NCBI GenBank assembly: GCA_964035545.1
Contig: CAXIUT010000121.1
Span: 1-12,144, forward strand
Source: Bugula neritina
Lineage: Eukaryota > Animalia > Bryozoa
DNA: 12,144 nt
Direction: 5' to 3'
Below, piece after piece: positions 1-12,144 of the stretch; the first letter of the stretch is position 1; the number at the start of each line of letters is the position of its first letter. Position numbers and translations under genes: made by a program. The notes below the pieces were generated by a model, which saw only the letters and a program-made list of their open reading frames with translations, made no database searches and was not told where the DNA came from.

Positions 1-93
1 CCCAACCCCAACCCCAACCCCAACCCCAACCCCAACCCCAACCCCAACCCCAACCCCAACCCCAACCCCAACCCCAACCCCAACCCCAACCCC
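1..93. repeat. Left telomere, (CCCCAA)n (C4A2)
   Basis: Perfect CCCCAA tandem repeats from base 1 to 93, then unique AT-rich sequence; this is the Tetrahymena-type ciliate telomeric unit. Confidence 0.99.
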
Positions 94-276
94 ATGTCAT
101 CATATTATTCTATTTACATTTAAAGATTAATATAAAATCCTAAAGATATAAAATATTTAATTTAGTCAATATACTCGTATCTGTCATCACTTATGATTGA
201 TATTCTTAGAAATATCTACCCAATTCTTAATGAATAAATATAGTAAAAAAATAATCATAATTTACATAGACAGAGA

Positions 277-963
277 TCAATCAGACTATTAAGTCGACTA
301 ACTGTCTATATATCCGGGATGGATCCATCTCTGAAATACTCCATGGTTCCACAACCCGTTTCTCCCATACCCGCAGATGTCAATCATCAATCCCTCTCCA
401 TGTTGTTTGTTGTTGACCCATTTGCCGTAAATTTTGCTTCCATCAAGATGAGTTTCAATTCCCCTCCCATGGCAAGTATCACACCAAAATTCACCTTCAT
501 ACTTTCTTCCGTCTGGCAGACTGTAAGCCCCCTACCCGTGCCTCATGTTGTTCCAATACTAGCCATAATATCGATGTCCGTTAGGCCAAATATGCTCTCC
601 AAGCCCTTATTTCCTATCATTGATCCAATCTCCTTAGTAGTAAGAATTATCTTAGTAATAGTTCTTTCCTGAACCATGCCTCTCATTTGCCTTGAACGAA
701 CCTACGTAGCACTATCCACTGTCCCATACTTTTATTCCCTCTCCCTGCTCTTTGTCATTAAACCACTCTCCATCGTACTTAGCTCCATATTTGTAGAGAC
801 AAATCCCTTTTCCCCATCTTTTACCTTCGCTCCAATAGCCTTTGTATACATCTCCATTCGGATAAAAATTGAGTCCATATCCTTTGGGTTATTTACTGAC
901 TTTCACCTCTTCTTCGCCTTCATAACTCATCTAAGAAGCAGACCCTTTATCGTAAGAACTCAT
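277..963 (-). CDS. MORN-repeat protein, 228 aa (TAR=Glu)
   Basis: ATG at 963, TGA at 279-277, with no internal TGA. Translation gives serial MORN units: YPNGDVYKGYWSEGKRWGKG, YKYGAKYDGEWFNDKEQGEG, YYEDNSYYEGDWINDRKEGLG, WPNGHRYYGEYWNNMRHGEG, LPDGRKYEGEFWCDTCHGRG. The listed + ORFs 319-672 and 676-966 are its antisense shadow. Confidence 0.95.
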
Positions 964-1775
964 TAAATGATTATATTGAATATTAATAGGATTATTTTAC
1001 TTCTAATTAACTCATAAGGTAGTAATAACTATAAAGAGCTGATCATAATAAATTAAAAAATACAATACAAAGTGATTCAAAATGATAATTACTTTCTCCT
1101 GAACAGTTAAAAATTAATTTCCTGTCTAACATTTGATTATTTCTTGGATAAAATCATCAATTACATCAAAAAAAACTAGAATATTACCTCAAATTAAATT
1201 AATTTATTTATTTTATTTCAAAATAACAATGAGAATCATATAGTTTTTAATCAGAAAAACTTCTATAGTTTAAATATCCATTTAGTTTCTCTTTATTTAT
1301 TTAAATTTCATCATTGAAAATATGAACATTAACGATGACTATTGAAACCAGTAAGTCAAAAAAGCATATCAATAAGTATTTATATCAATATAAATAAAGT
1401 ATTTAAGACAAAAAAAGACTTTTAATCTGTTTAATTGCAATATTAAGTCTTGTTTAAGATATTGTTTTCAATGTTCTAGTCATTAATGATCTCTACATTG
1501 TACATCATTTGATTTATATTGCTTAAATCATCAAATATTATTTCTTTTTTAAATCATAGAAGTCATCTAACTAAAATTAAGTACGATATTTGAAGACAGC
1601 AAAATGAGAATTTAAAATTAACATGAAAATAGATAGATTTGTTAGATATGGTATAGTTTGGAGAGTATTTATTCAAAAAATCAAATATTAAGCTATGTTT
1701 TCTTTAACAATGATAACCAACTTTAACTCCTATTGATAATGCAACATATAATATTTAAAATTATAAAGAAGAATT

Positions 1776-4816: not shown

Positions 4817-7729
4817 TCATATTAATTTGTCGATGTCAATCAACTCTCCATCATTCTAAAATATTGGCTCTTAATCTTGCTAGCTAACAACTATCTAATT
4901 TATCATCTTTTGATATAATTAGTTATTTTACTCATATATCTTTCTTATTTGTGGTCCATCTCTTTACTACTAAAAAATCAATTAGAATTGGAACTTTTCT
5001 AGACTACAATCAGGAGCCATGTAGCGTGTGTTATTTGTGTAATGCAAAGTAGGAGGAAATAAAGGATCCAGAGAAACTCTTAAAGTTTGTTCAAGCATAG
5101 AAGGAATAACTCTTTTAACTACACTACTACTCAACTATAAACAAGGATTCGTGTTAACTTAAATCAAATTGACCTACAGATTTTAATCTACCATAAAATC
5201 AAGACCAAATACTTCAAAGTTATGCAATTTCCTTTGAGGATCTAGAGTTATATAGGTTGAAAAAATTGCATCTTTTGCGAGATCTCTCATTTTGATATAT
5301 ATTGCAGACATATCGAACTCTTTTTAAGGAAAGTTTTTCGTAAAGTATCTCTGAAGATCATTATAAGACACCTTGTTGCCTTCTTCATAGCGACTATAGC
5401 TTTCAGCTGATTGCTGAACTGCATCATTTGTGAGATGAATAGTTTAATCTTTGATGTCAGTTAGATCAAAAAATTATGATGATGTTCTGACATATCCTTC
5501 CTCAAAGAAATAAACTCTTAGTCTACCATATAGTGATGTTATAACCATGAAATGTCTAATATCGAATTTTCTTCCTTTAAAAAGTAAAGGCTTTTCTATA
5601 TATTTTTGAAGAATATAAGTCTTATCATCTCCATTTTCATGTTTTCCCTTTTTATTTAGTTTTCTTCTTATCTAATGAAGATCTTTAAGCACAACAATTC
5701 CTGCTCCTTGATTACTGTTTTAACCAGGCTTTAGTATCCATATATTAGCCTGTCCATGGTCTTTTCCATATTTTTTATAAGCTAAAAGAAATTCTTTAAA
5801 GCTAGGATCACTTTATCCTTGTCTAATATGAAAAGTTTAAGGAAAAGCTTTGTTTAATGACTGGTTAGTAAGTTGATAATAGAGTCTGAGATGATGAAGA
5901 AGAGCTTTTTTGTTTCCCAAACTATGATTATACTCAATATGATTATGCACATGAATTTATTATTGAGTACGTCTCGTGAGATATCCGTTGGGTATATATT
6001 TAAGACGTACCTCTAAATCATCAGGATTAAAAATATGTTTATCTGATATTGAATTCAAGTAAATTTAAGAATCATTTGCAGTTAATATTTTTTGTTATTA
6101 TTTGACTGAAATAGGAGCTTTAAACATAACTCCTTTAGGAAGTAGATGTTCAAGTGGTTTTTTAGATTCCTGTCCAGTTTTACTGCATAGATGAACAGCT
6201 GATATATTACTTAAAGATAGATACTTTTTATTATTTCTATTTGTCAGTTTTACCTCTTCATTCTCTTGTTTTAACTGCTAACTTTTCTTTTATTTAATTA
6301 CTTTTTGAGAATAATCAAGTACATTTTTAGTACAAGATGGTTCTTGTTAAAAGATGCTTTTGTTTTTTAGTTGTGTCCAAATAAAATGAGCTTCATTTAT
6401 ATTTTTAGTTTAATGCCACCATATTTTTCTTTTCATTATACTTCTGATCAACATAGAGTTGTTTCCAGGACCAACAAAATAAAAACATTTACTGATAGAT
6501 TGCTTTTCAGCTTTGGACATTGACATTGTTTCAACTATGTTTAGTGAATCATATATTCGATGAGCTAGATTTATCATAAAAAGAAACTATCTATATTTTG
6601 ACATTTTTTGCTAATAAACGCCTTTTTATTCATTGTTATTATTTAAAATAAAAGTAAAGTTTTTTTTGTTTTTTTATTTTAAATTTCTAGTTGTCTTTTA
6701 AGGACTAAACACTTTCTTTTACTTTAATTAACTGGCATATTCTTTGATGGAGTTCTTTTTTTAAAGTTTTTTTAAAGAAGGTTTCAAAATCTTACTTTTA
6801 TCAAGAGTTTATTAATTCTGAATCTCATTAATTACCAACTATAAATTCTTTTTCCTTTTTTGCTTCTTACATTTAGTCAGAATATTTTCAACCAAAACTT
6901 CTTTTTTTGACTCAATTACAAGTTTTTTTTCTTTCTAATGTTAAGCTCTTTTCGAAAGTATATAGTGATGAAGAGTAGAATACTTGGGTTCTTATTCAAT
7001 TTTATCAATAATTTTTTTTTGTTTATACTTTCTTGAAGGATGTAAGGCAGGAATAACACTATATTTCTTTTAATTAGTTCCATTATCTTATTGATAGTCT
7101 TCTTTTTCATATTGTAAATTTTAATCTTGAAATTAACTAGAATTAAAATTCGTTGTAGACATATTTTTAGCATCATTATTGCTTAGTTCAGGAACTTTTA
7201 TTAAGTTAAACAAATTTCCATTATGTTTTTAATTGATATTATTTCCTTTCAAAGGAATTTAGTATAATTTTCCTTTAGTTATTCTAAAATATTGATCTCT
7301 TTCTTAGCTATTATCAAGTGAACTCACAACCTTTCTTTTCACACTACATTATTGCCTTTTGGAAGTCTATTCTTCATGAAGTTACTTTTTGATATCAAAA
7401 TGATCTATTTTCATTTATAGTGCAGTTCTATCTCGATTCAAAGCTAAAAATTATTAATTTAAACACTTTTTATAACTTCCTTTTTTATCTTTAATCTTTT
7501 TTTTATTCGTAGCTGGTGCAAATTCATTAGTATTACTATTTAGAACACTATTCATAAAACTAAATGAACTCAGGAGGGAGCCACTCTCTTGAATAGAGTA
7601 AGGAGTTAAGTCATAGTGACCACATTTAGGTAAAAACGATGAGCGAGGTTATTATTTCTTTAAATCATGACTTGTTTTTTTAAGAAAATAGATCAATTTT
7701 TTATCTTTAGGTTTTACTTATTGATTCAT
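4817..7729 (-). CDS. Tubulin-tyrosine-ligase-like (TTLL) tubulin glycylase/glutamylase family protein, 970 aa, intronless
   Basis: A single TGA-free frame from ATG at 7729 to TGA at 4819-4817. Motifs: YFVGPGNNSMLIRSIMKRKIWW, HFIWTQ, HNHIEYNHSLGNKKAL, FPETFHI, WILKPGENSNQGAGI, YILQKYIEKPLLFKGRKFDIRH, EGYVRTSS, IHLTNDAVQ, YEEGNKVSY, FEVFGLDFMVD, LIEVNTNPCLE. Long low-complexity K/N/E-rich N-terminus; the start is the most upstream ATG I identified. Confidence 0.95.
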
Positions 7730-8716
7730 TAATATAAAATTATTAATAGCAAACTATGAAAAACAATATGAACAAATGATTCATTAAATAAAGTAGCAAA
7801 AGTAATCACTTTTTGTATTATATTCTCCAAATATTAGATAAATATCTAGGTTGATAAAAATGACTAATATTAAAGAGAAGAACCCATTCAGGTACATTCT
7901 AACATAAAGATATTTCCTAAAAAACTGATTGAAAATGTAATAATTAATTTTATTTGATCTTTAGACTTCAAAAAATGACATTCTCATCAATAACAACCTT
8001 TTAAATAGCTACACCTATTGAAAATATGACAATCAAATAGCAAAGAAAAGTTTTTAAGCTGTCAAATAAGTAAGTGGTAAAAATACTAATCATTAATATT
8101 GTTTGAAATATAAAATACAGTTTCCTAGGATAACAAAGAAAAATATTTTTATTCATTTTAAAATTAAATTGAAATGAAATTGATCCCATCACTATGTTAC
8201 TAAATATATTGTTTAAATGATCAATATATATATATATTAGCACCTTAGAAATCAAGGTCATTTATTTATTCACTCTATAATGATCAATATATAATCAAGT
8301 AAGAAAATAGATAAATATCAAAAGTTGAATATTCTTATTTTCAAGTCAATTTTTTTATTAAAAAAAAATAGTTTATTTTATTATTATTAAGATCATTTTT
8401 TACTGCTTTGTTTGCTTTAAATAGATTTAAATATTATTTTGTTTGATTTTTAAATCATATTTTTACCGTTTCAACTCAATAAAATAAATAGTTCATTTTT
8501 ATGAAGATTTATTAGTTTGTTAGAATTGCAACTTATTTTTGATGCTTTAATTAATATATAGTCTTATTTTTATTGTTTTTTCCTAGAATTCAATTTTTTC
8601 TTGATTCAGTTGCAAAAATAAAATAAAAAAAGAAAGAGATCGAGTACCTAAAACTACTTAAATCAAGATAATGACTTAGATCTTTCCTTATTTAATCGAT
8701 AAATACTAAAATATCT

Positions 8717-10039
8717 ATGATCAGTAGATATTAACACTTCAATAGGTTATAAACTCTGAATAAAAATTAGATTGTTATAATAATTGAAATCGAAAGGTCA
8801 ATGAATAAAGCATCTTCACCAATGGGCAAATCAAATATCGGATAAAACAAAAGAAAAGCTATTTTCAATAAAATACGTCAGTCTTTAACGGGTTTCTAAC
8901 TAATTCGAAAAAATCAAAGTATTGTAAAGAAGCGGCTTGAAGAAGAAGTGAAAAGTGTTTCAAACTCAGACAGCGATTAAAATGTTAATTAACTCAAGAA
9001 TTAAGTTTGTAACGCCTAACTTTTCACTTAAAAATACTAAATTCTTGAGAAACTAGGAGAAGGAAGCAATGGAGTTGTGTACAAAGTCATCAAGAAATAA
9101 ACTAAAGAGCACTATGCAGTAAAATAATTTATTTTTGAAGAAGAAAATTTGCCAGGAATCAAATCTAACTTTCTGAGTATCAAAAGTTTAAGGCATCCAA
9201 ATATCATCAACTACTAAGCTCTCTATATTGATATAAAAAAAAGAACAGCATGGCTAGTGATGGAATTCATCAGTTCACCTTCATTAGCATCATTATTTCC
9301 CTTTCTACAAGTAGAAAAATAAGTCAAAAATATTATGTTCCAACTCTTCAGTTGCCTCACTTACCTCCACAAGCATGACTTAGTTCATAGGGACATCAAA
9401 CCTGAGAACATTCTTTATGACCAAAAGAAAAAAACTATAAAAATCATAGATTTCGGGATTGCAAAGAGATGCAAAAGGAGAGGAGTTGTTTTTGATATGT
9501 GGACTAATACTGGAACCCTATTATATAAGGCTCCTTAGATGTTTTTTGGAAGTTACAGAGAAGGGATAGACATATGGGCAGCTGGAATCATGCTATACTG
9601 GCTAGTAGCTGGTAGAACTCCTTTTGAGTCTGAATATCATAACTAAACTATCAAAAATATCCGATAGGCAGAACTAGTTTTTCCTTCAGAATTTAATAGT
9701 TGCAATTTAGACATTAAAAACCTACTTAGTTGTATGATAAACAGAAACATCTAAGAAAGGTTTACTGCATAACAGTGTACAAAACACAGATGGTTTAGAT
9801 CTATTTTAGAATCATCAACTACTCTTCATAAAAAAGAGGTTTAATCTACAAATAAAACCGTGAAAGTTCAAGAAGTTAAGAACAAGCTAAAGGTTTTGCA
9901 TACTTTTACTTTAAGAGATAATTTAGAGGATAGCAACATCCTTGACATATCAAAATCAAGTTTAAAATCATCGAGACCCTATGTTAAGATAATAGGAGGA
10001 GAGTAGTATCATTATATTGATTCTAATTGGAAAGAATGA
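8717..10039 (+). CDS. Ser/Thr protein kinase (CAMK-like), ~440 aa; start uncertain
   Basis: [47 protein letters not shown] (E = TAG at 9536-9538), [25 protein letters not shown]; TGA at 10037-10039. Alternative starts are ATG 8801, or ATG 8671 via a possible 22-nt intron at 8724-8745. Confidence 0.95.
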
Positions 10040-10287
10040 AAGTTATCATTGATTATTTTATAATTTTTGATATCCTCATAATATCTAAACATCATCATTT
10101 CCATTTGATTTCAAAAGTTTAATTAGTTAATCGAGTGATTTGAGAAATTAATTAGTTGTAAATTACAAATATATTATCTTTGACAATTGAGTTCTTGGAT
10201 CAAACACTTTAGTTAATCCTGTTCTATTAGTTTTCATTTACTATATAATATAGTTTTTAAATAAAATCAATCATATTCTTAAGAAAA

Positions 10288-10894
10288 ATGGTAAACTTAA
10301 AAGAAATACGATACACATTAACTGCTTTTAGAACAAAAAAAACATATCTTTTCTTCCTAGCAGCCCAGCTACTTCTAGTCCTACTTATTATCCCCATCGC
10401 ATTCGCCTCTCCCACACATTTTAAAACTCCAATAGTAATAATCCTAGAGTTCTTCCTCTTTCTTATGATTACCTTCGACCTGTACCTCTCTCTAACTCAG
10501 ATTAGGAATTCGACTTGCCTCAGAATAACAATTTTGGAAAAGCAAAGCAAATATATTTGACCTCTGTTTACTTTTCATTTTCGCTGCAACTCTTGTCTTC
10601 TTAGTATTTTATGGATAAGGATAAGGCAAAGACTACAGGAGACTGCTATAGACTGATGATGTGGTTATTTTGATAATTGTTCTAACTCGATATGTAATGC
10701 AGGTTACTCGTCTTTTTTGTGCTTTTCGAATGGCTAGAAAAAACAGAGGAATTCACTCATAAATAAAAAAGATAGATCTGAATAACATTGAACTAGCTAA
10801 TAATCAAAGTTTTAATTTCAACGAAGAACACAAAGCTGATCAGATATTAAGATAAAAAATGAACAAGAAACATGAGTTGATTGAAGAAAACTGA
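10288..10894 (+). CDS. Four-TM voltage-sensor-like domain protein with no pore, 195 aa; exons 10288-10481 and 10501-10894
   Basis: S1-like YLFFLAAQLLLVLLIIPI; S2-like IVIILEFFLFLMITFDLLGIRL; S2-S3 FWKSKANIFDL (compare the channel consensus FF...WNxFD); S4-like LTRYVMQVTRLFCAFRMARKNR; then a short polar tail and TGA at 10892-10894. Confidence 0.7.
10482..10500 (+). other. Intron, 19 nt
   Basis: gtacctctctctaactcag; retention stops at TGA 10558-10560, while removal restores the S2-S3-S4 frame. Confidence 0.85.
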
Positions 10895-11003: not shown

Positions 11004-11708
11004 TCAGCAATGTTTTTTCTTAGAATCATCTTGTTTCTTGTTTGAGTCATTAAGTTTAGCAAATTTAAAGAACTCTCCTTTCAATTTTTTAAAGGTCTAA
11101 ACTTCCTGCTTATGTGAATGCAAGCTACTTCTCTTTTATTCAGTTAGCCCTTTATCTTCTTCAAAGACTTTATGTTATTTTTCTTTCTGATAGTTAATTT
11201 CAAGTTTATTGGCTTCAACATCGCATTTTAATTCTTTTTCTTACACTTAAAGCTAATTATCGCTGGTAGAAATTTATTTGTACCTTTTTAGAGTATCACC
11301 TTACTCATTTTGTTTATCTTTATTTAAGAAAATTGATCTGATATCAACAATTGAGTTGTCTCTGAAGTAGAAAAACTCAATTAAGAGTTTGGCATGCTTA
11401 TCTGGTGATTTATTTAATTTACAAATACATTTATGTAAAAAATTAGGGGTTGGGGTTGGGGTTGGGGTTGGGGTTGGGGTTGGGGTTGGGGTTGGGGTTG
11501 GGTCTTAAACTATTACTTTAATGTTGAAGTTAGTGGAGTAAGGGTCTAGGTAGAATTCAGTGGTTGAATGTTGGTTACCAAATCCATTTTGAATTTAGTA
11601 GTTAGAAGCAAGGGTGATAGTTTCCTTATTTTTGTGAATCTTTAAATGAGCTTTGCATTGTTTGAGTCTGAGGGAAAGCTGTTTAATAGTGAATATGACC
11701 TTCAACAT
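11004..11708 (-). CDS. Putative N-terminal C2 (NT-C2/EEIG1-like) domain protein, 234 aa as assembled, interrupted in frame by a telomere tract
   Basis: ATG at 11708: MLKVIFTIKQLSLRLKQCKAHLKIHKNKETITLASNYEIQNG...FNIKVIVED-(PT)9P-NFLHKCICKLNKSPDKHAKLLIEFFY...KKHC, then TGA TGA (11006-11001). The alternating beta-strand pattern and the L-x-K-S-P-D-K-x-A-x-L ending resemble ciliate NT-C2 proteins; the family call is from recollection only. Confidence 0.65.
11446..11502 (+). repeat. Internal telomeric tract, (GGGGTT)9 GGG
   Basis: 57 bp of perfect repeat in the same orientation as the right telomere, 513 bp inside it. Confidence 0.98.
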
Positions 11709-12015
11709 GCAGAATTCTAGAATTATTAGCTTTAAAGTGATATAATTATACCCTGCTTATTTGATAAAACCTTAAGAATAGCCAATATGATAAAGGAAAT
11801 GATTTCGATTATTTATAACTATATAAAATAGGCATTGAATCAATACATCTTCCCTTCATTCAGACAAATAAAGAAGCAATATTGGAAAAAAATGTTTAAA
11901 ATATATAATTCTAGGTACAAATAAAGACAAAATGTTTCAAAAAAATTATCAAATAAATATTTTAGTTAATATTTGATACTGATTTTAATTTCAATTAAAA
12001 TATAAAATGTATATA

Positions 12016-12144
12016 GGGGTTGGGGTTGGGGTTGGGGTTGGGGTTGGGGTTGGGGTTGGGGTTGGGGTTGGGGTTGGGGTTGGGGTTGGGGTTGGGGGTT
12101 GGGGTTGGGGTTGGGGGGGTTTGGGGGTTGGGGTTGGGGTTGGG
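12016..12144. repeat. Right telomere, (GGGGTT)n
   Basis: GGGGTT repeats to the end of the sequence, with a few homopolymer-length variants in the last ~50 nt. Confidence 0.99.

What the first reader, a model, noticed from the sequence alone, without database searches (positions are those of the whole stretch)
11446..11502. Telomere tract sits exactly in frame inside a protein-coding gene: alternative telomere-addition site or a coding (Pro-Thr)9 insert
Seen: the 57-bp tract (19 codons) lies after codon 68 of the minus-strand gene 11708-11004. The frame is the same on both sides, and the tract reads D-PTPTPTPTPTPTPTPTPTP-NFLH. There is no opposing CCCCAA block, so this is not a head-to-head fusion. 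Inference A (favoured): many copies of the chromosome end at 11445, and their telomere reads overwrote about 57 bp of real sequence in the consensus. The domain seems to lack a strand here, which fits replacement. That shorter isoform would lose the promoter and first 68 codons, so alternative fragmentation would set the dosage of this gene. Inference B: telomerase healing followed by re-ligation produced a real in-frame insert.
Basis: partly seen in the sequence, partly recalled or inferred. Interest (0 to 1): 0.85.

Follow-up and report, generated by a model that had tools for sequence, protein, structure and literature searches.

The report
Telomere repeats overwrite 19 gene codons
A 57-base run of telomere repeats sits inside a gene near the end of a small ciliate chromosome, but it replaces exactly 19 codons of a conserved protein domain without changing the length, so it is most likely an assembly footprint of shorter, telomere-capped copies of the chromosome rather than a real coding insert.

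Summary
Perfect (GGGGTT)9.5 lies at 11446-11502, in the same orientation as the terminal telomere at 12016-12144. Under the ciliate code it reads (Pro-Thr)9 in frame in the minus-strand ORF 11708..11004.

Relatives settle two points. Both flanks belong to one gene, an uncharacterised ciliate family with an N-terminal C2-like beta-sandwich and a charged tail. The tract is a length-neutral replacement, not an insertion. Window codon number equals homologue residue number over 135 positions, and the family has no indels there. Codons 70-88 fall where every relative has a conserved block that forms one beta strand and a turn of the sandwich.

A random break, healing and rejoining would rarely lose exactly as many bases as it gained. 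An in-place overwrite during read correction, layout or consensus does so naturally. My best reading (0.6) is a consensus artefact left by molecules that carry a telomere added at 11445, 570 bp inside the usual end.

The abundance of a short isoform and any dosage role are untested without reads. A physically real patch remains possible (about 0.15). Interest is low to moderate.

The parts
1..94 (-). Left terminal telomere, CCCCAA repeats (G-strand on the minus strand)
   Evidence: TRF gives period 6, 15.7 copies, 100% matches. The junction read on the G-strand is ...GACAT|GGGGTT.
11004..11708 (-). Gene for a 234-codon protein (ciliate code): N-terminal C2-like beta-sandwich (codons 1 to about 120) followed by a Lys/Glu/Gln-rich tail. 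The stop is TGA at 11004-11006.
   Evidence: Code-6 translation. Homologues share the same start, M(L/F/Y)KVV...RLKEC, and the SPDKQ motif. The homologue model is an 8-strand sandwich that matches C2 domains. The helical nature of the tail is inferred.
11503..11708 (-). Native 5' part of the gene: codons 1-68 and part of codon 69 (strands 1-5 of the domain)
   Evidence: The pieces for codons 1-37 and 39-67 align to homologue columns 1-37 and 39-67.
11446..11502 (+). Internal (GGGGTT)9.5 tract occupying codons 70-87 and parts of codons 69 and 88. It stands in place of the conserved block G-x-x-(R/K)-K-(L/M)-G-G-x-x-x-L-x-(I/L)-x-x-(Y/W)-E-(P/S).
   Evidence: This block is strand E72-82 plus a turn in the model.
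11304..11445 (-). Native part of the gene directly after the tract (codons 89-135, last strands of the domain). Position 11445 is the last non-telomeric base of the putative secondary telomere addition site.
   Evidence: The 47-aa piece hits homologues and aligns to columns 89-135. Codon 88 (CCT, plus-strand AGG at 11445-11447) matches the conserved Pro. The GG at 11446-11447 may therefore be native, which is inferred.
11709..12015 (.). AT-rich 5' flank of the gene and subtelomeric spacer of the full-length chromosome
   Evidence: Direct reading. No homologous coding sequence was found there.
12016..12144 (+). Right terminal telomere, GGGGTT repeats, with homopolymer-type errors in the last 50 bases
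   Evidence: TRF gives 21.5 copies, 92% matches, 6% indels. The junction is ...TATATA|GGGGTT.

Best explanation
The window is a complete 12-kb macronuclear chromosome of a Tetrahymena-type ciliate. It has G4T2 telomeres, uses TAA/TAG for Gln, and has about 27% G+C. The internal tract is not a coding insert and most likely is not physically continuous with the DNA to its right. Some copies of the chromosome carry a telomere added de novo after base 11445, inside the C2-like gene and 570 bp short of the usual end. During read correction, overlap layout or consensus calling, the telomeric tail of such reads was written in place over 57 bases of the full-length sequence. The assembly then continued in register with full-length reads. 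This explains why the length and the reading frame are unchanged.

Shown:
- The tract is there.
- Both flanks are one gene.
- The net length change is zero against an indel-free family.
- One beta strand and a turn are lost.
- The junction is of the same type (A/T followed directly by GGGGTT) as at the two true ends.

Inferred:
- Telomere-capped shorter molecules exist.
- The overwriting step happened.
- The short form arose by somatic healing of a break rather than programmed breakage.
For: - The three stop-free pieces of the window gene align independently to homologue P0007 at columns 1-37, 39-67 and 89-135. These are their own codon numbers.
- In a 26-row alignment the family has no indel over columns 1-135. 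No member has a Pro-Thr run.
- With the tract masked as X, the global alignment to P0007, P0008 and P0009 is ungapped. With the tract deleted, the alignment to P0007 needs exactly a 19-residue gap.
- Code-6 ORFs from four independent metagenome loci show the same spacing.
- The AlphaFold model of P0007 (pLDDT 80) places residues 72-82 in a core strand. The fold is C2-like. A (PT)9 segment there cannot be a functional variant.
- All three telomere junctions begin with GGGGTT directly after A/T.
- The tract has the orientation expected for a right-hand end.
- Literature: multi-telomere contigs are read as alternative fragmentation or as internal telomere-like repeats (PMC3558436). Corrected long reads with embedded telomeres are filtered as chimeras (PMC6937825). 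Somatic neotelomeres form inside genes in Paramecium (PMC13076228).
Against: No reads are available, so neither the short isoform nor the overwriting is observed. Common aligners soft-clip a mismatching telomere tail, so not every pipeline would produce this. With noisy reads, a layout artefact would preserve length only approximately, yet the match here is exact. In Tetrahymena thermophila programmed telomere addition lies within about 5-25 bp of a Cbs (PMC5182062), so a second site 570 bp away is not the norm for that genus. The tract is error-free, which would also fit a real sequence.
Confidence: 0.6

Rival explanations
1. This is a pipeline artefact with no biological short isoform behind it. 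A single aberrant or chimeric read, a correction error, or an in-place substitution during processing wrote telomere repeats over 57 bases.
For: A length-neutral overwrite is what any in-place substitution gives. Embedded telomeric sequence in corrected long reads is a recognised artefact class (PMC6937825). The right telomere shows long-read-type errors, so the contig comes from error-prone data.
Against: The proximal junction has the same form as the two genuine ends, and the tract is in the correct orientation for this end. Both are expected for a genuine addition site and not for a random chimera. A random chimera would not resume in register in the same gene.
Confidence: 0.2
2. The tract is physically real on some or all copies. 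A break in the gene was healed by telomerase at 11445. The short new telomere was then rejoined to, or primed synthesis on, an intact sister copy. The result is a damaged allele encoding (PT)9 in place of strand 6.
For: The tract is perfect and both flanks are native right up to its edges. The macronucleus is polyploid (established knowledge of ciliates), so a damaged copy could persist beside intact ones. Telomerase healing of internal breaks is known in ciliates (PMC13076228).
Against: The event would have to delete exactly as many bases as it added. That is roughly a 1-in-50 to 1-in-100 coincidence, given variable telomere length and an indel-free family. The product lacks a core strand. 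No relative carries anything similar.
Confidence: 0.15
3. The contig is a chimera. The segment 11503-12144 comes from another chromosome and the frame match is chance.
For: An open frame alone is weak evidence, since 25% of 68-codon frames lack TGA.
Against: Codons 1-67 to the right of the tract align to the N-terminal 67 residues of the same family whose later part lies to the left of the tract. The register is exact and the start motif is the same.
Confidence: 0.02
4. This is a genuine, selected Pro-Thr linker insert in the protein.
For: It is in frame, and PT-rich linkers exist in other proteins (general knowledge).
Against: It replaces conserved core residues instead of adding to a loop. 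Its DNA is identical to the telomere repeat in telomere orientation. It is absent from all relatives.
Confidence: 0.01

Closest known systems
Alternative telomere addition sites and chromosome isoforms of Oxytricha (AF-TAS; PMC3558436, PMC6937825)
   Same: A shorter, telomere-capped version of a longer macronuclear chromosome. Assemblies then show extra telomeric repeats or multi-telomere contigs.
   Different: In Oxytricha the sites are programmed, frequent (about a quarter of chromosomes) and mostly lie between genes, with G4T4 telomeres. Here there is a single site inside a coding domain of a G4T2 ciliate, and read support is unknown.
Somatic neotelomeres from telomere healing in the Paramecium macronucleus (Subtle-seq, PMC13076228)
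   Same: De novo telomere addition at breaks inside chromosomes, with little avoidance of genes. It produces truncated copies among many intact ones.
   Different: It was shown with telomere-enriched reads and not as a tract embedded in a consensus. Paramecium telomeres mix G4T2 and G3T3 (my own knowledge), whereas all repeats here are G4T2.
Cbs-directed chromosome breakage of Tetrahymena (PMC5182062)
   Same: The same telomere repeat, and the same style of junction at chromosome ends.
   Different: Addition there is within about 5-25 bp of a Cbs that is removed from the macronucleus. A second site 570 bp away inside a gene does not fit one Cbs. No Cbs-like 15-mer is present in the window.
Interstitial telomeric sequences inserted at repaired breaks in vertebrate genomes (my own knowledge, not checked here)
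   Same: A short run of telomere repeats lying between unique sequences.
   Different: Those are net insertions between contiguous flanks. Here 57 bases of native sequence are missing and the length is unchanged.
C2 domains (for example cPLA2 1rlw, Trichomonas C2 proteins 9zk1)
   Same: The homologue model is an 8-strand beta-sandwich with TM-score 0.64-0.69 to C2 structures.
   Different: There is no Pfam C2 match at E up to 10. Sequence identity to the structural matches is 6-19%. Calcium-binding loops were not examined.

Membership tests
Tetrahymena-type telomere (terminal G4T2 array) | Tandem GGGGTT units with the G-strand running 5'->3' towards the chromosome end | tested here: met
   9.5 perfect units on the plus strand, in the same orientation as the right-end array.
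Tetrahymena-type telomere (terminal G4T2 array) | Lies at the physical end of the molecule | tested here: not met
   It is followed in the consensus by 513 non-telomeric bases and a second array.
Alternative telomere addition site / truncated chromosome isoform | The sequence beyond the site is the natural continuation of the same locus | tested here: met
   Codons on both sides align in exact register to one protein family.
Alternative telomere addition site / truncated chromosome isoform | Independent telomere-bearing reads or molecules that end at the site | not testable with these tools
   No reads are available. The window's ORFs are not on record in the public collections. A flank-gap-flank DNA pattern gave no hit.
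Interstitial telomeric insertion at a repaired break | Net insertion between flanks that are otherwise contiguous | tested here: not met
   The net length change is zero. Deleting the tract forces a 19-residue gap against the homologue P0007.
Head-to-head telomere fusion | G-rich array abutting a C-rich array | tested here: not met
   No CCCCAA run occurs outside 1-94.
Cbs-directed programmed breakage | 15-bp Cbs within about 30 bp of the addition site in the germline | not testable with these tools
   The Cbs is germline-only, and no micronuclear sequence is available. No Cbs-like site with up to 3 mismatches occurs in the window, which is expected either way.
Coding Pro-Thr linker | Present in relatives, or located in a variable loop or linker | tested here: not met
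   It is absent from all rows of A3. It occupies a conserved core strand.
C2 domain | Eight-strand beta-sandwich fold | tested here: met
   Model of homologue P0007 has pLDDT 80 and 8 strands. Foldseek top hits are C2 domains, E about 2e-6, TM-score 0.64-0.69. This was tested on the homologue and not on the window protein itself.
C2 domain | Match to the Pfam C2 sequence profiles | tested here: not met
   No Pfam family at E up to 10 for the window pieces or for P0007, P0001 and P0006.

The most novel reading that the evidence does not exclude
The tract is physically real. A macronuclear copy broken inside the gene was healed by telomerase at 11445. The short new telomere end then paired in register with an intact sister copy and primed synthesis across a symmetric 57-nt bubble. 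This left a length-neutral telomere patch inside the gene. It would be a recombinational rescue of a healed end in an amitotic polyploid nucleus, a route not described for ciliates as far as my searches show.
Probability: 0.1. Interest if true: 0.7.

Novelty: not a real feature. Interest (0 to 1): 0.25.

Why it matters
If the reading is right, the (Pro-Thr)9 segment should not be annotated as protein. The gene model should be repaired from reads, because 57 native bases are missing from the record. The useful residue is a candidate secondary telomere addition site inside a gene in a G4T2 ciliate. In the best-known member of that group, Tetrahymena thermophila, chromosome ends are held to be precise (within about 5-25 bp of a Cbs). 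If reads confirm a sizeable truncated class, this would be a case of Paramecium-like somatic healing or end heterogeneity in that group. It would also be a warning that ciliate assemblies can embed telomere tails in place. In passing, the work defines an unannotated, indel-free ciliate family with a C2-like fold.

Tried and rejected
- Pfam on the five stop-free pieces of the gene and on homologues P0007, P0001 and P0006 gave nothing.
- My first Pfam call used out-of-frame coordinates and failed.
- A PDB sequence search of P0007 gave only a weak Bem1 PX hit, E 0.017, taken as chance.
- The search for related loci on metagenome contigs with alignment A1 matched 600 pattern stretches, none confirmed.
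- Exact look-ups of three window ORFs, aimed at an independent assembly of the same organism, found nothing on record.
- A left-flank / gap of 48-66 / right-flank DNA pattern gave 0 hits in metagenome contigs.
- A Cbs search with up to 3 mismatches gave 0 hits.
- Telomere repeats were not found in the homologue loci L001-L013, so there is no evidence that the gene is subtelomeric elsewhere.
- The species could not be named. The length limit of the word-indexed search and the in-frame TAA/TAG codons prevented full-length queries by reference.
- Rejected readings: chimera of unrelated genes, head-to-head fusion, functional PT linker, net insertion.

Full report
**What the window is.** The 12,144-base window has CCCCAA repeats at 1-94 and GGGGTT repeats at 12016-12144. 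Its G+C is mostly 19-33% in 500-base windows, and 39% over 1-1000. Long reading frames appear only when TAA and TAG are read as glutamine. It is therefore a complete small macronuclear chromosome of a ciliate with Tetrahymena-type G4T2 telomeres. I could not name the species. The other genes are:
- a MORN-repeat protein at 280-1011, minus strand;
- a tubulin-tyrosine-ligase-like protein in the 987-codon frame 4820-7780, minus strand;
- a protein kinase at about 8675-10036, plus strand;
- membrane-protein-like frames without Pfam matches.

It is not human, viral or toxin-related, so none of the operators' restrictions came into play.

**Checking the observation.**
- An 18-base stretch of the repeat is never produced by 200 shuffles of the window.
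- No isolated GGGGTT hexamer exists outside the three arrays.
- The orientation is that of the right-hand telomere, and no C-rich array abuts it.
- In code 6 the minus-strand frame from ATG 11708 to TGA 11004 has 234 codons and reads ...VIVQD-(PT)9-P-NFLHK....

The open frame by itself proves little. Two of the three minus frames run open through the tract, and a quarter of all 68-codon frames in this window lack TGA.

**Are the two flanks one gene?** By reference the tools translate with the bacterial code, so I searched the stop-free pieces.
- The 47-residue piece just after the tract (codons 89-135) found P0001-P0003 in the 1.84-billion-protein library.
- P0001 led to P0007, a 147-residue protein without internal stops.
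- A profile search added about twenty more fragments.
- Code-6 translation of the contigs carrying these proteins (L001, L002, L010, L012) gives full open frames. They start M(L/F/Y)KVV...RLKEC, contain NG(F/L)...T(T/S)(E/Q)FY and SPDKQ, and continue into a charged tail, as the window gene does.
- The contigs range from 33 to 52% G+C, and many fragments end at in-frame TAA/TAG. This fits a family spread among uncultured ciliates. No member carries a functional name, and none has a Pfam domain on record.

**Replacement, not insertion.** The three window pieces were given to the aligner as separate sequences. They fall on homologue columns 1-37, 39-67 and 89-135, which are their own codon numbers.
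- In the 26-row alignment no sequence has a gap anywhere in columns 1-135.
- With the tract masked as X, the window protein aligns to P0007, P0008 and P0009 without any gap. With the tract removed, the alignment to P0007 needs a gap of exactly 19 residues.
- The tract therefore stands in place of a block that is conserved in every relative, in P0007 LGNDRKLGGEANLKILDYEP.
- The flanks are native right up to the edges. Codon 88 (CCT, made of base 11445 plus the first two G of the tract) matches the conserved Pro of the E-P-N motif, so those two G may be native. Codon 69 is a plausible Asp where relatives have Leu, Gln or Glu.

**What is lost.** An AlphaFold model of P0007, built with the family alignment, has mean pLDDT 80 and pTM 0.71 and forms an eight-strand beta-sandwich. 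Residues 72-82 form the sixth strand and 83-85 a short turn, with local pLDDT about 90. Foldseek against the PDB returns C2 domains (Trichomonas C2 proteins, cPLA2, extended synaptotagmin, CEP120) at E about 2e-6 and TM-score 0.64-0.69. Pfam's C2 profiles do not match. A (Pro-Thr)9 segment in place of a core strand cannot be a working variant.

**Most likely origin.** A break healed by telomerase and then rejoined has no reason to lose exactly as many bases as it gained. Any step that writes one read's tail over another read's coordinates keeps the length automatically. Such steps include read correction, overlap layout with a tolerated overhang, and column-wise consensus. I know of these behaviours from general experience with assemblers and could not test them here.

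The proximal junction (TTA then GGGGTT) has the same form as the two genuine ends (CAT then GGGGTT, ATA then GGGGTT), and the orientation suits this chromosome end. This points to real molecules capped after 11445 rather than a random chimera. Such a molecule would lack the promoter and codons 1-88 and so would be null for this gene. It would be 570 bp shorter than the full form.

The literature supports each element.
- Oxytricha contigs with extra telomeres are read as alternative fragmentation or as internal telomere-like repeats (PMC3558436).
- Corrected long reads with embedded telomeres are discarded as chimeras (PMC6937825).
- In Paramecium, somatic healing creates neotelomeres inside genes with little selectivity (PMC13076228).
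- In Tetrahymena thermophila programmed addition lies within about 5-25 bp of a Cbs (PMC5182062). If this organism behaves likewise, a site 570 bp away is better explained by somatic healing than by programmed breakage.
- No Cbs-like 15-mer is in the window. That is expected either way, because the Cbs is germline-only.

**Rivals.**
- An artefact with no real short isoform behind it (0.2) fits the in-place overwrite. It explains the telomere-like junction and orientation less well.
- A physically real patch (0.15) fits the perfect repeats and native flanks. It needs a coincidence of lengths and yields a broken domain.
- A chimera with another chromosome (0.02) and a selected Pro-Thr linker (0.01) are contradicted by the homologue alignment.

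**What I could not do.** No reads or independent assembly of the organism could be reached. Exact look-ups of three window ORFs found nothing on record. The metagenome scans found nothing. The existence and abundance of the short isoform, and any effect on gene dosage, therefore remain untested. The window protein itself could not be folded or searched whole, because of its in-frame TAA/TAG codons. The structural statements rest on the homologue P0007, which is 38-43% identical to the window pieces.

**Verdict.** The tract is best treated as a non-physical, length-neutral overwrite that marks a probable secondary telomere addition site at 11445.

Noticed in passing
window 280-1011 (minus strand); composition 1-1000: The leftmost kilobase has 39% G+C and a strong negative GC skew, against about 19-33% G+C elsewhere. 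It holds a MORN-repeat gene whose 3' end lies about 190 bp from the left telomere. The reason for the composition jump is unknown; it could be codon bias of a highly expressed gene, or recent origin.
   Followed up: partly
window 12094-12127: The distal part of the right telomere has homopolymer-type errors (GGGGGTT, GGGGGGGTTTGGGGG). The left telomere and the internal tract are perfect. This suggests error-prone long-read data at that end.
   Followed up: no
window 11446 and 12016: The internal and terminal arrays start exactly 570 bp apart, which is 95 hexamers, so they are in the same repeat phase. That is a 1-in-6 coincidence, or a hint about how the tail was placed.
   Followed up: no
P0007, P0008, P0009 and loci L001, L002, L010, L012: The gene belongs to an unannotated family found only in metagenome and SRA contigs that use TAA/TAG as sense codons. 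Members have an N-terminal C2-like sandwich that starts at the first Met, an invariant SPDK motif, no indels over 135 residues, and a charged tail. There is no Pfam domain and no functional name.
   Followed up: partly
window 4820-7780 (minus strand): A 987-codon open frame carries a tubulin-tyrosine-ligase-like domain (Pfam TTL, E 3e-18 on a 65-aa piece). It takes up a quarter of this small chromosome.
   Followed up: partly
window 10144-10891 (plus strand) and 11004-11708 (minus strand): The C2-like gene and its membrane-protein-like neighbour are convergent, with their 3' ends about 110 bp apart. A chromosome ending at 11445 would leave the neighbour intact, about 550 bp from the new telomere.
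   Followed up: no
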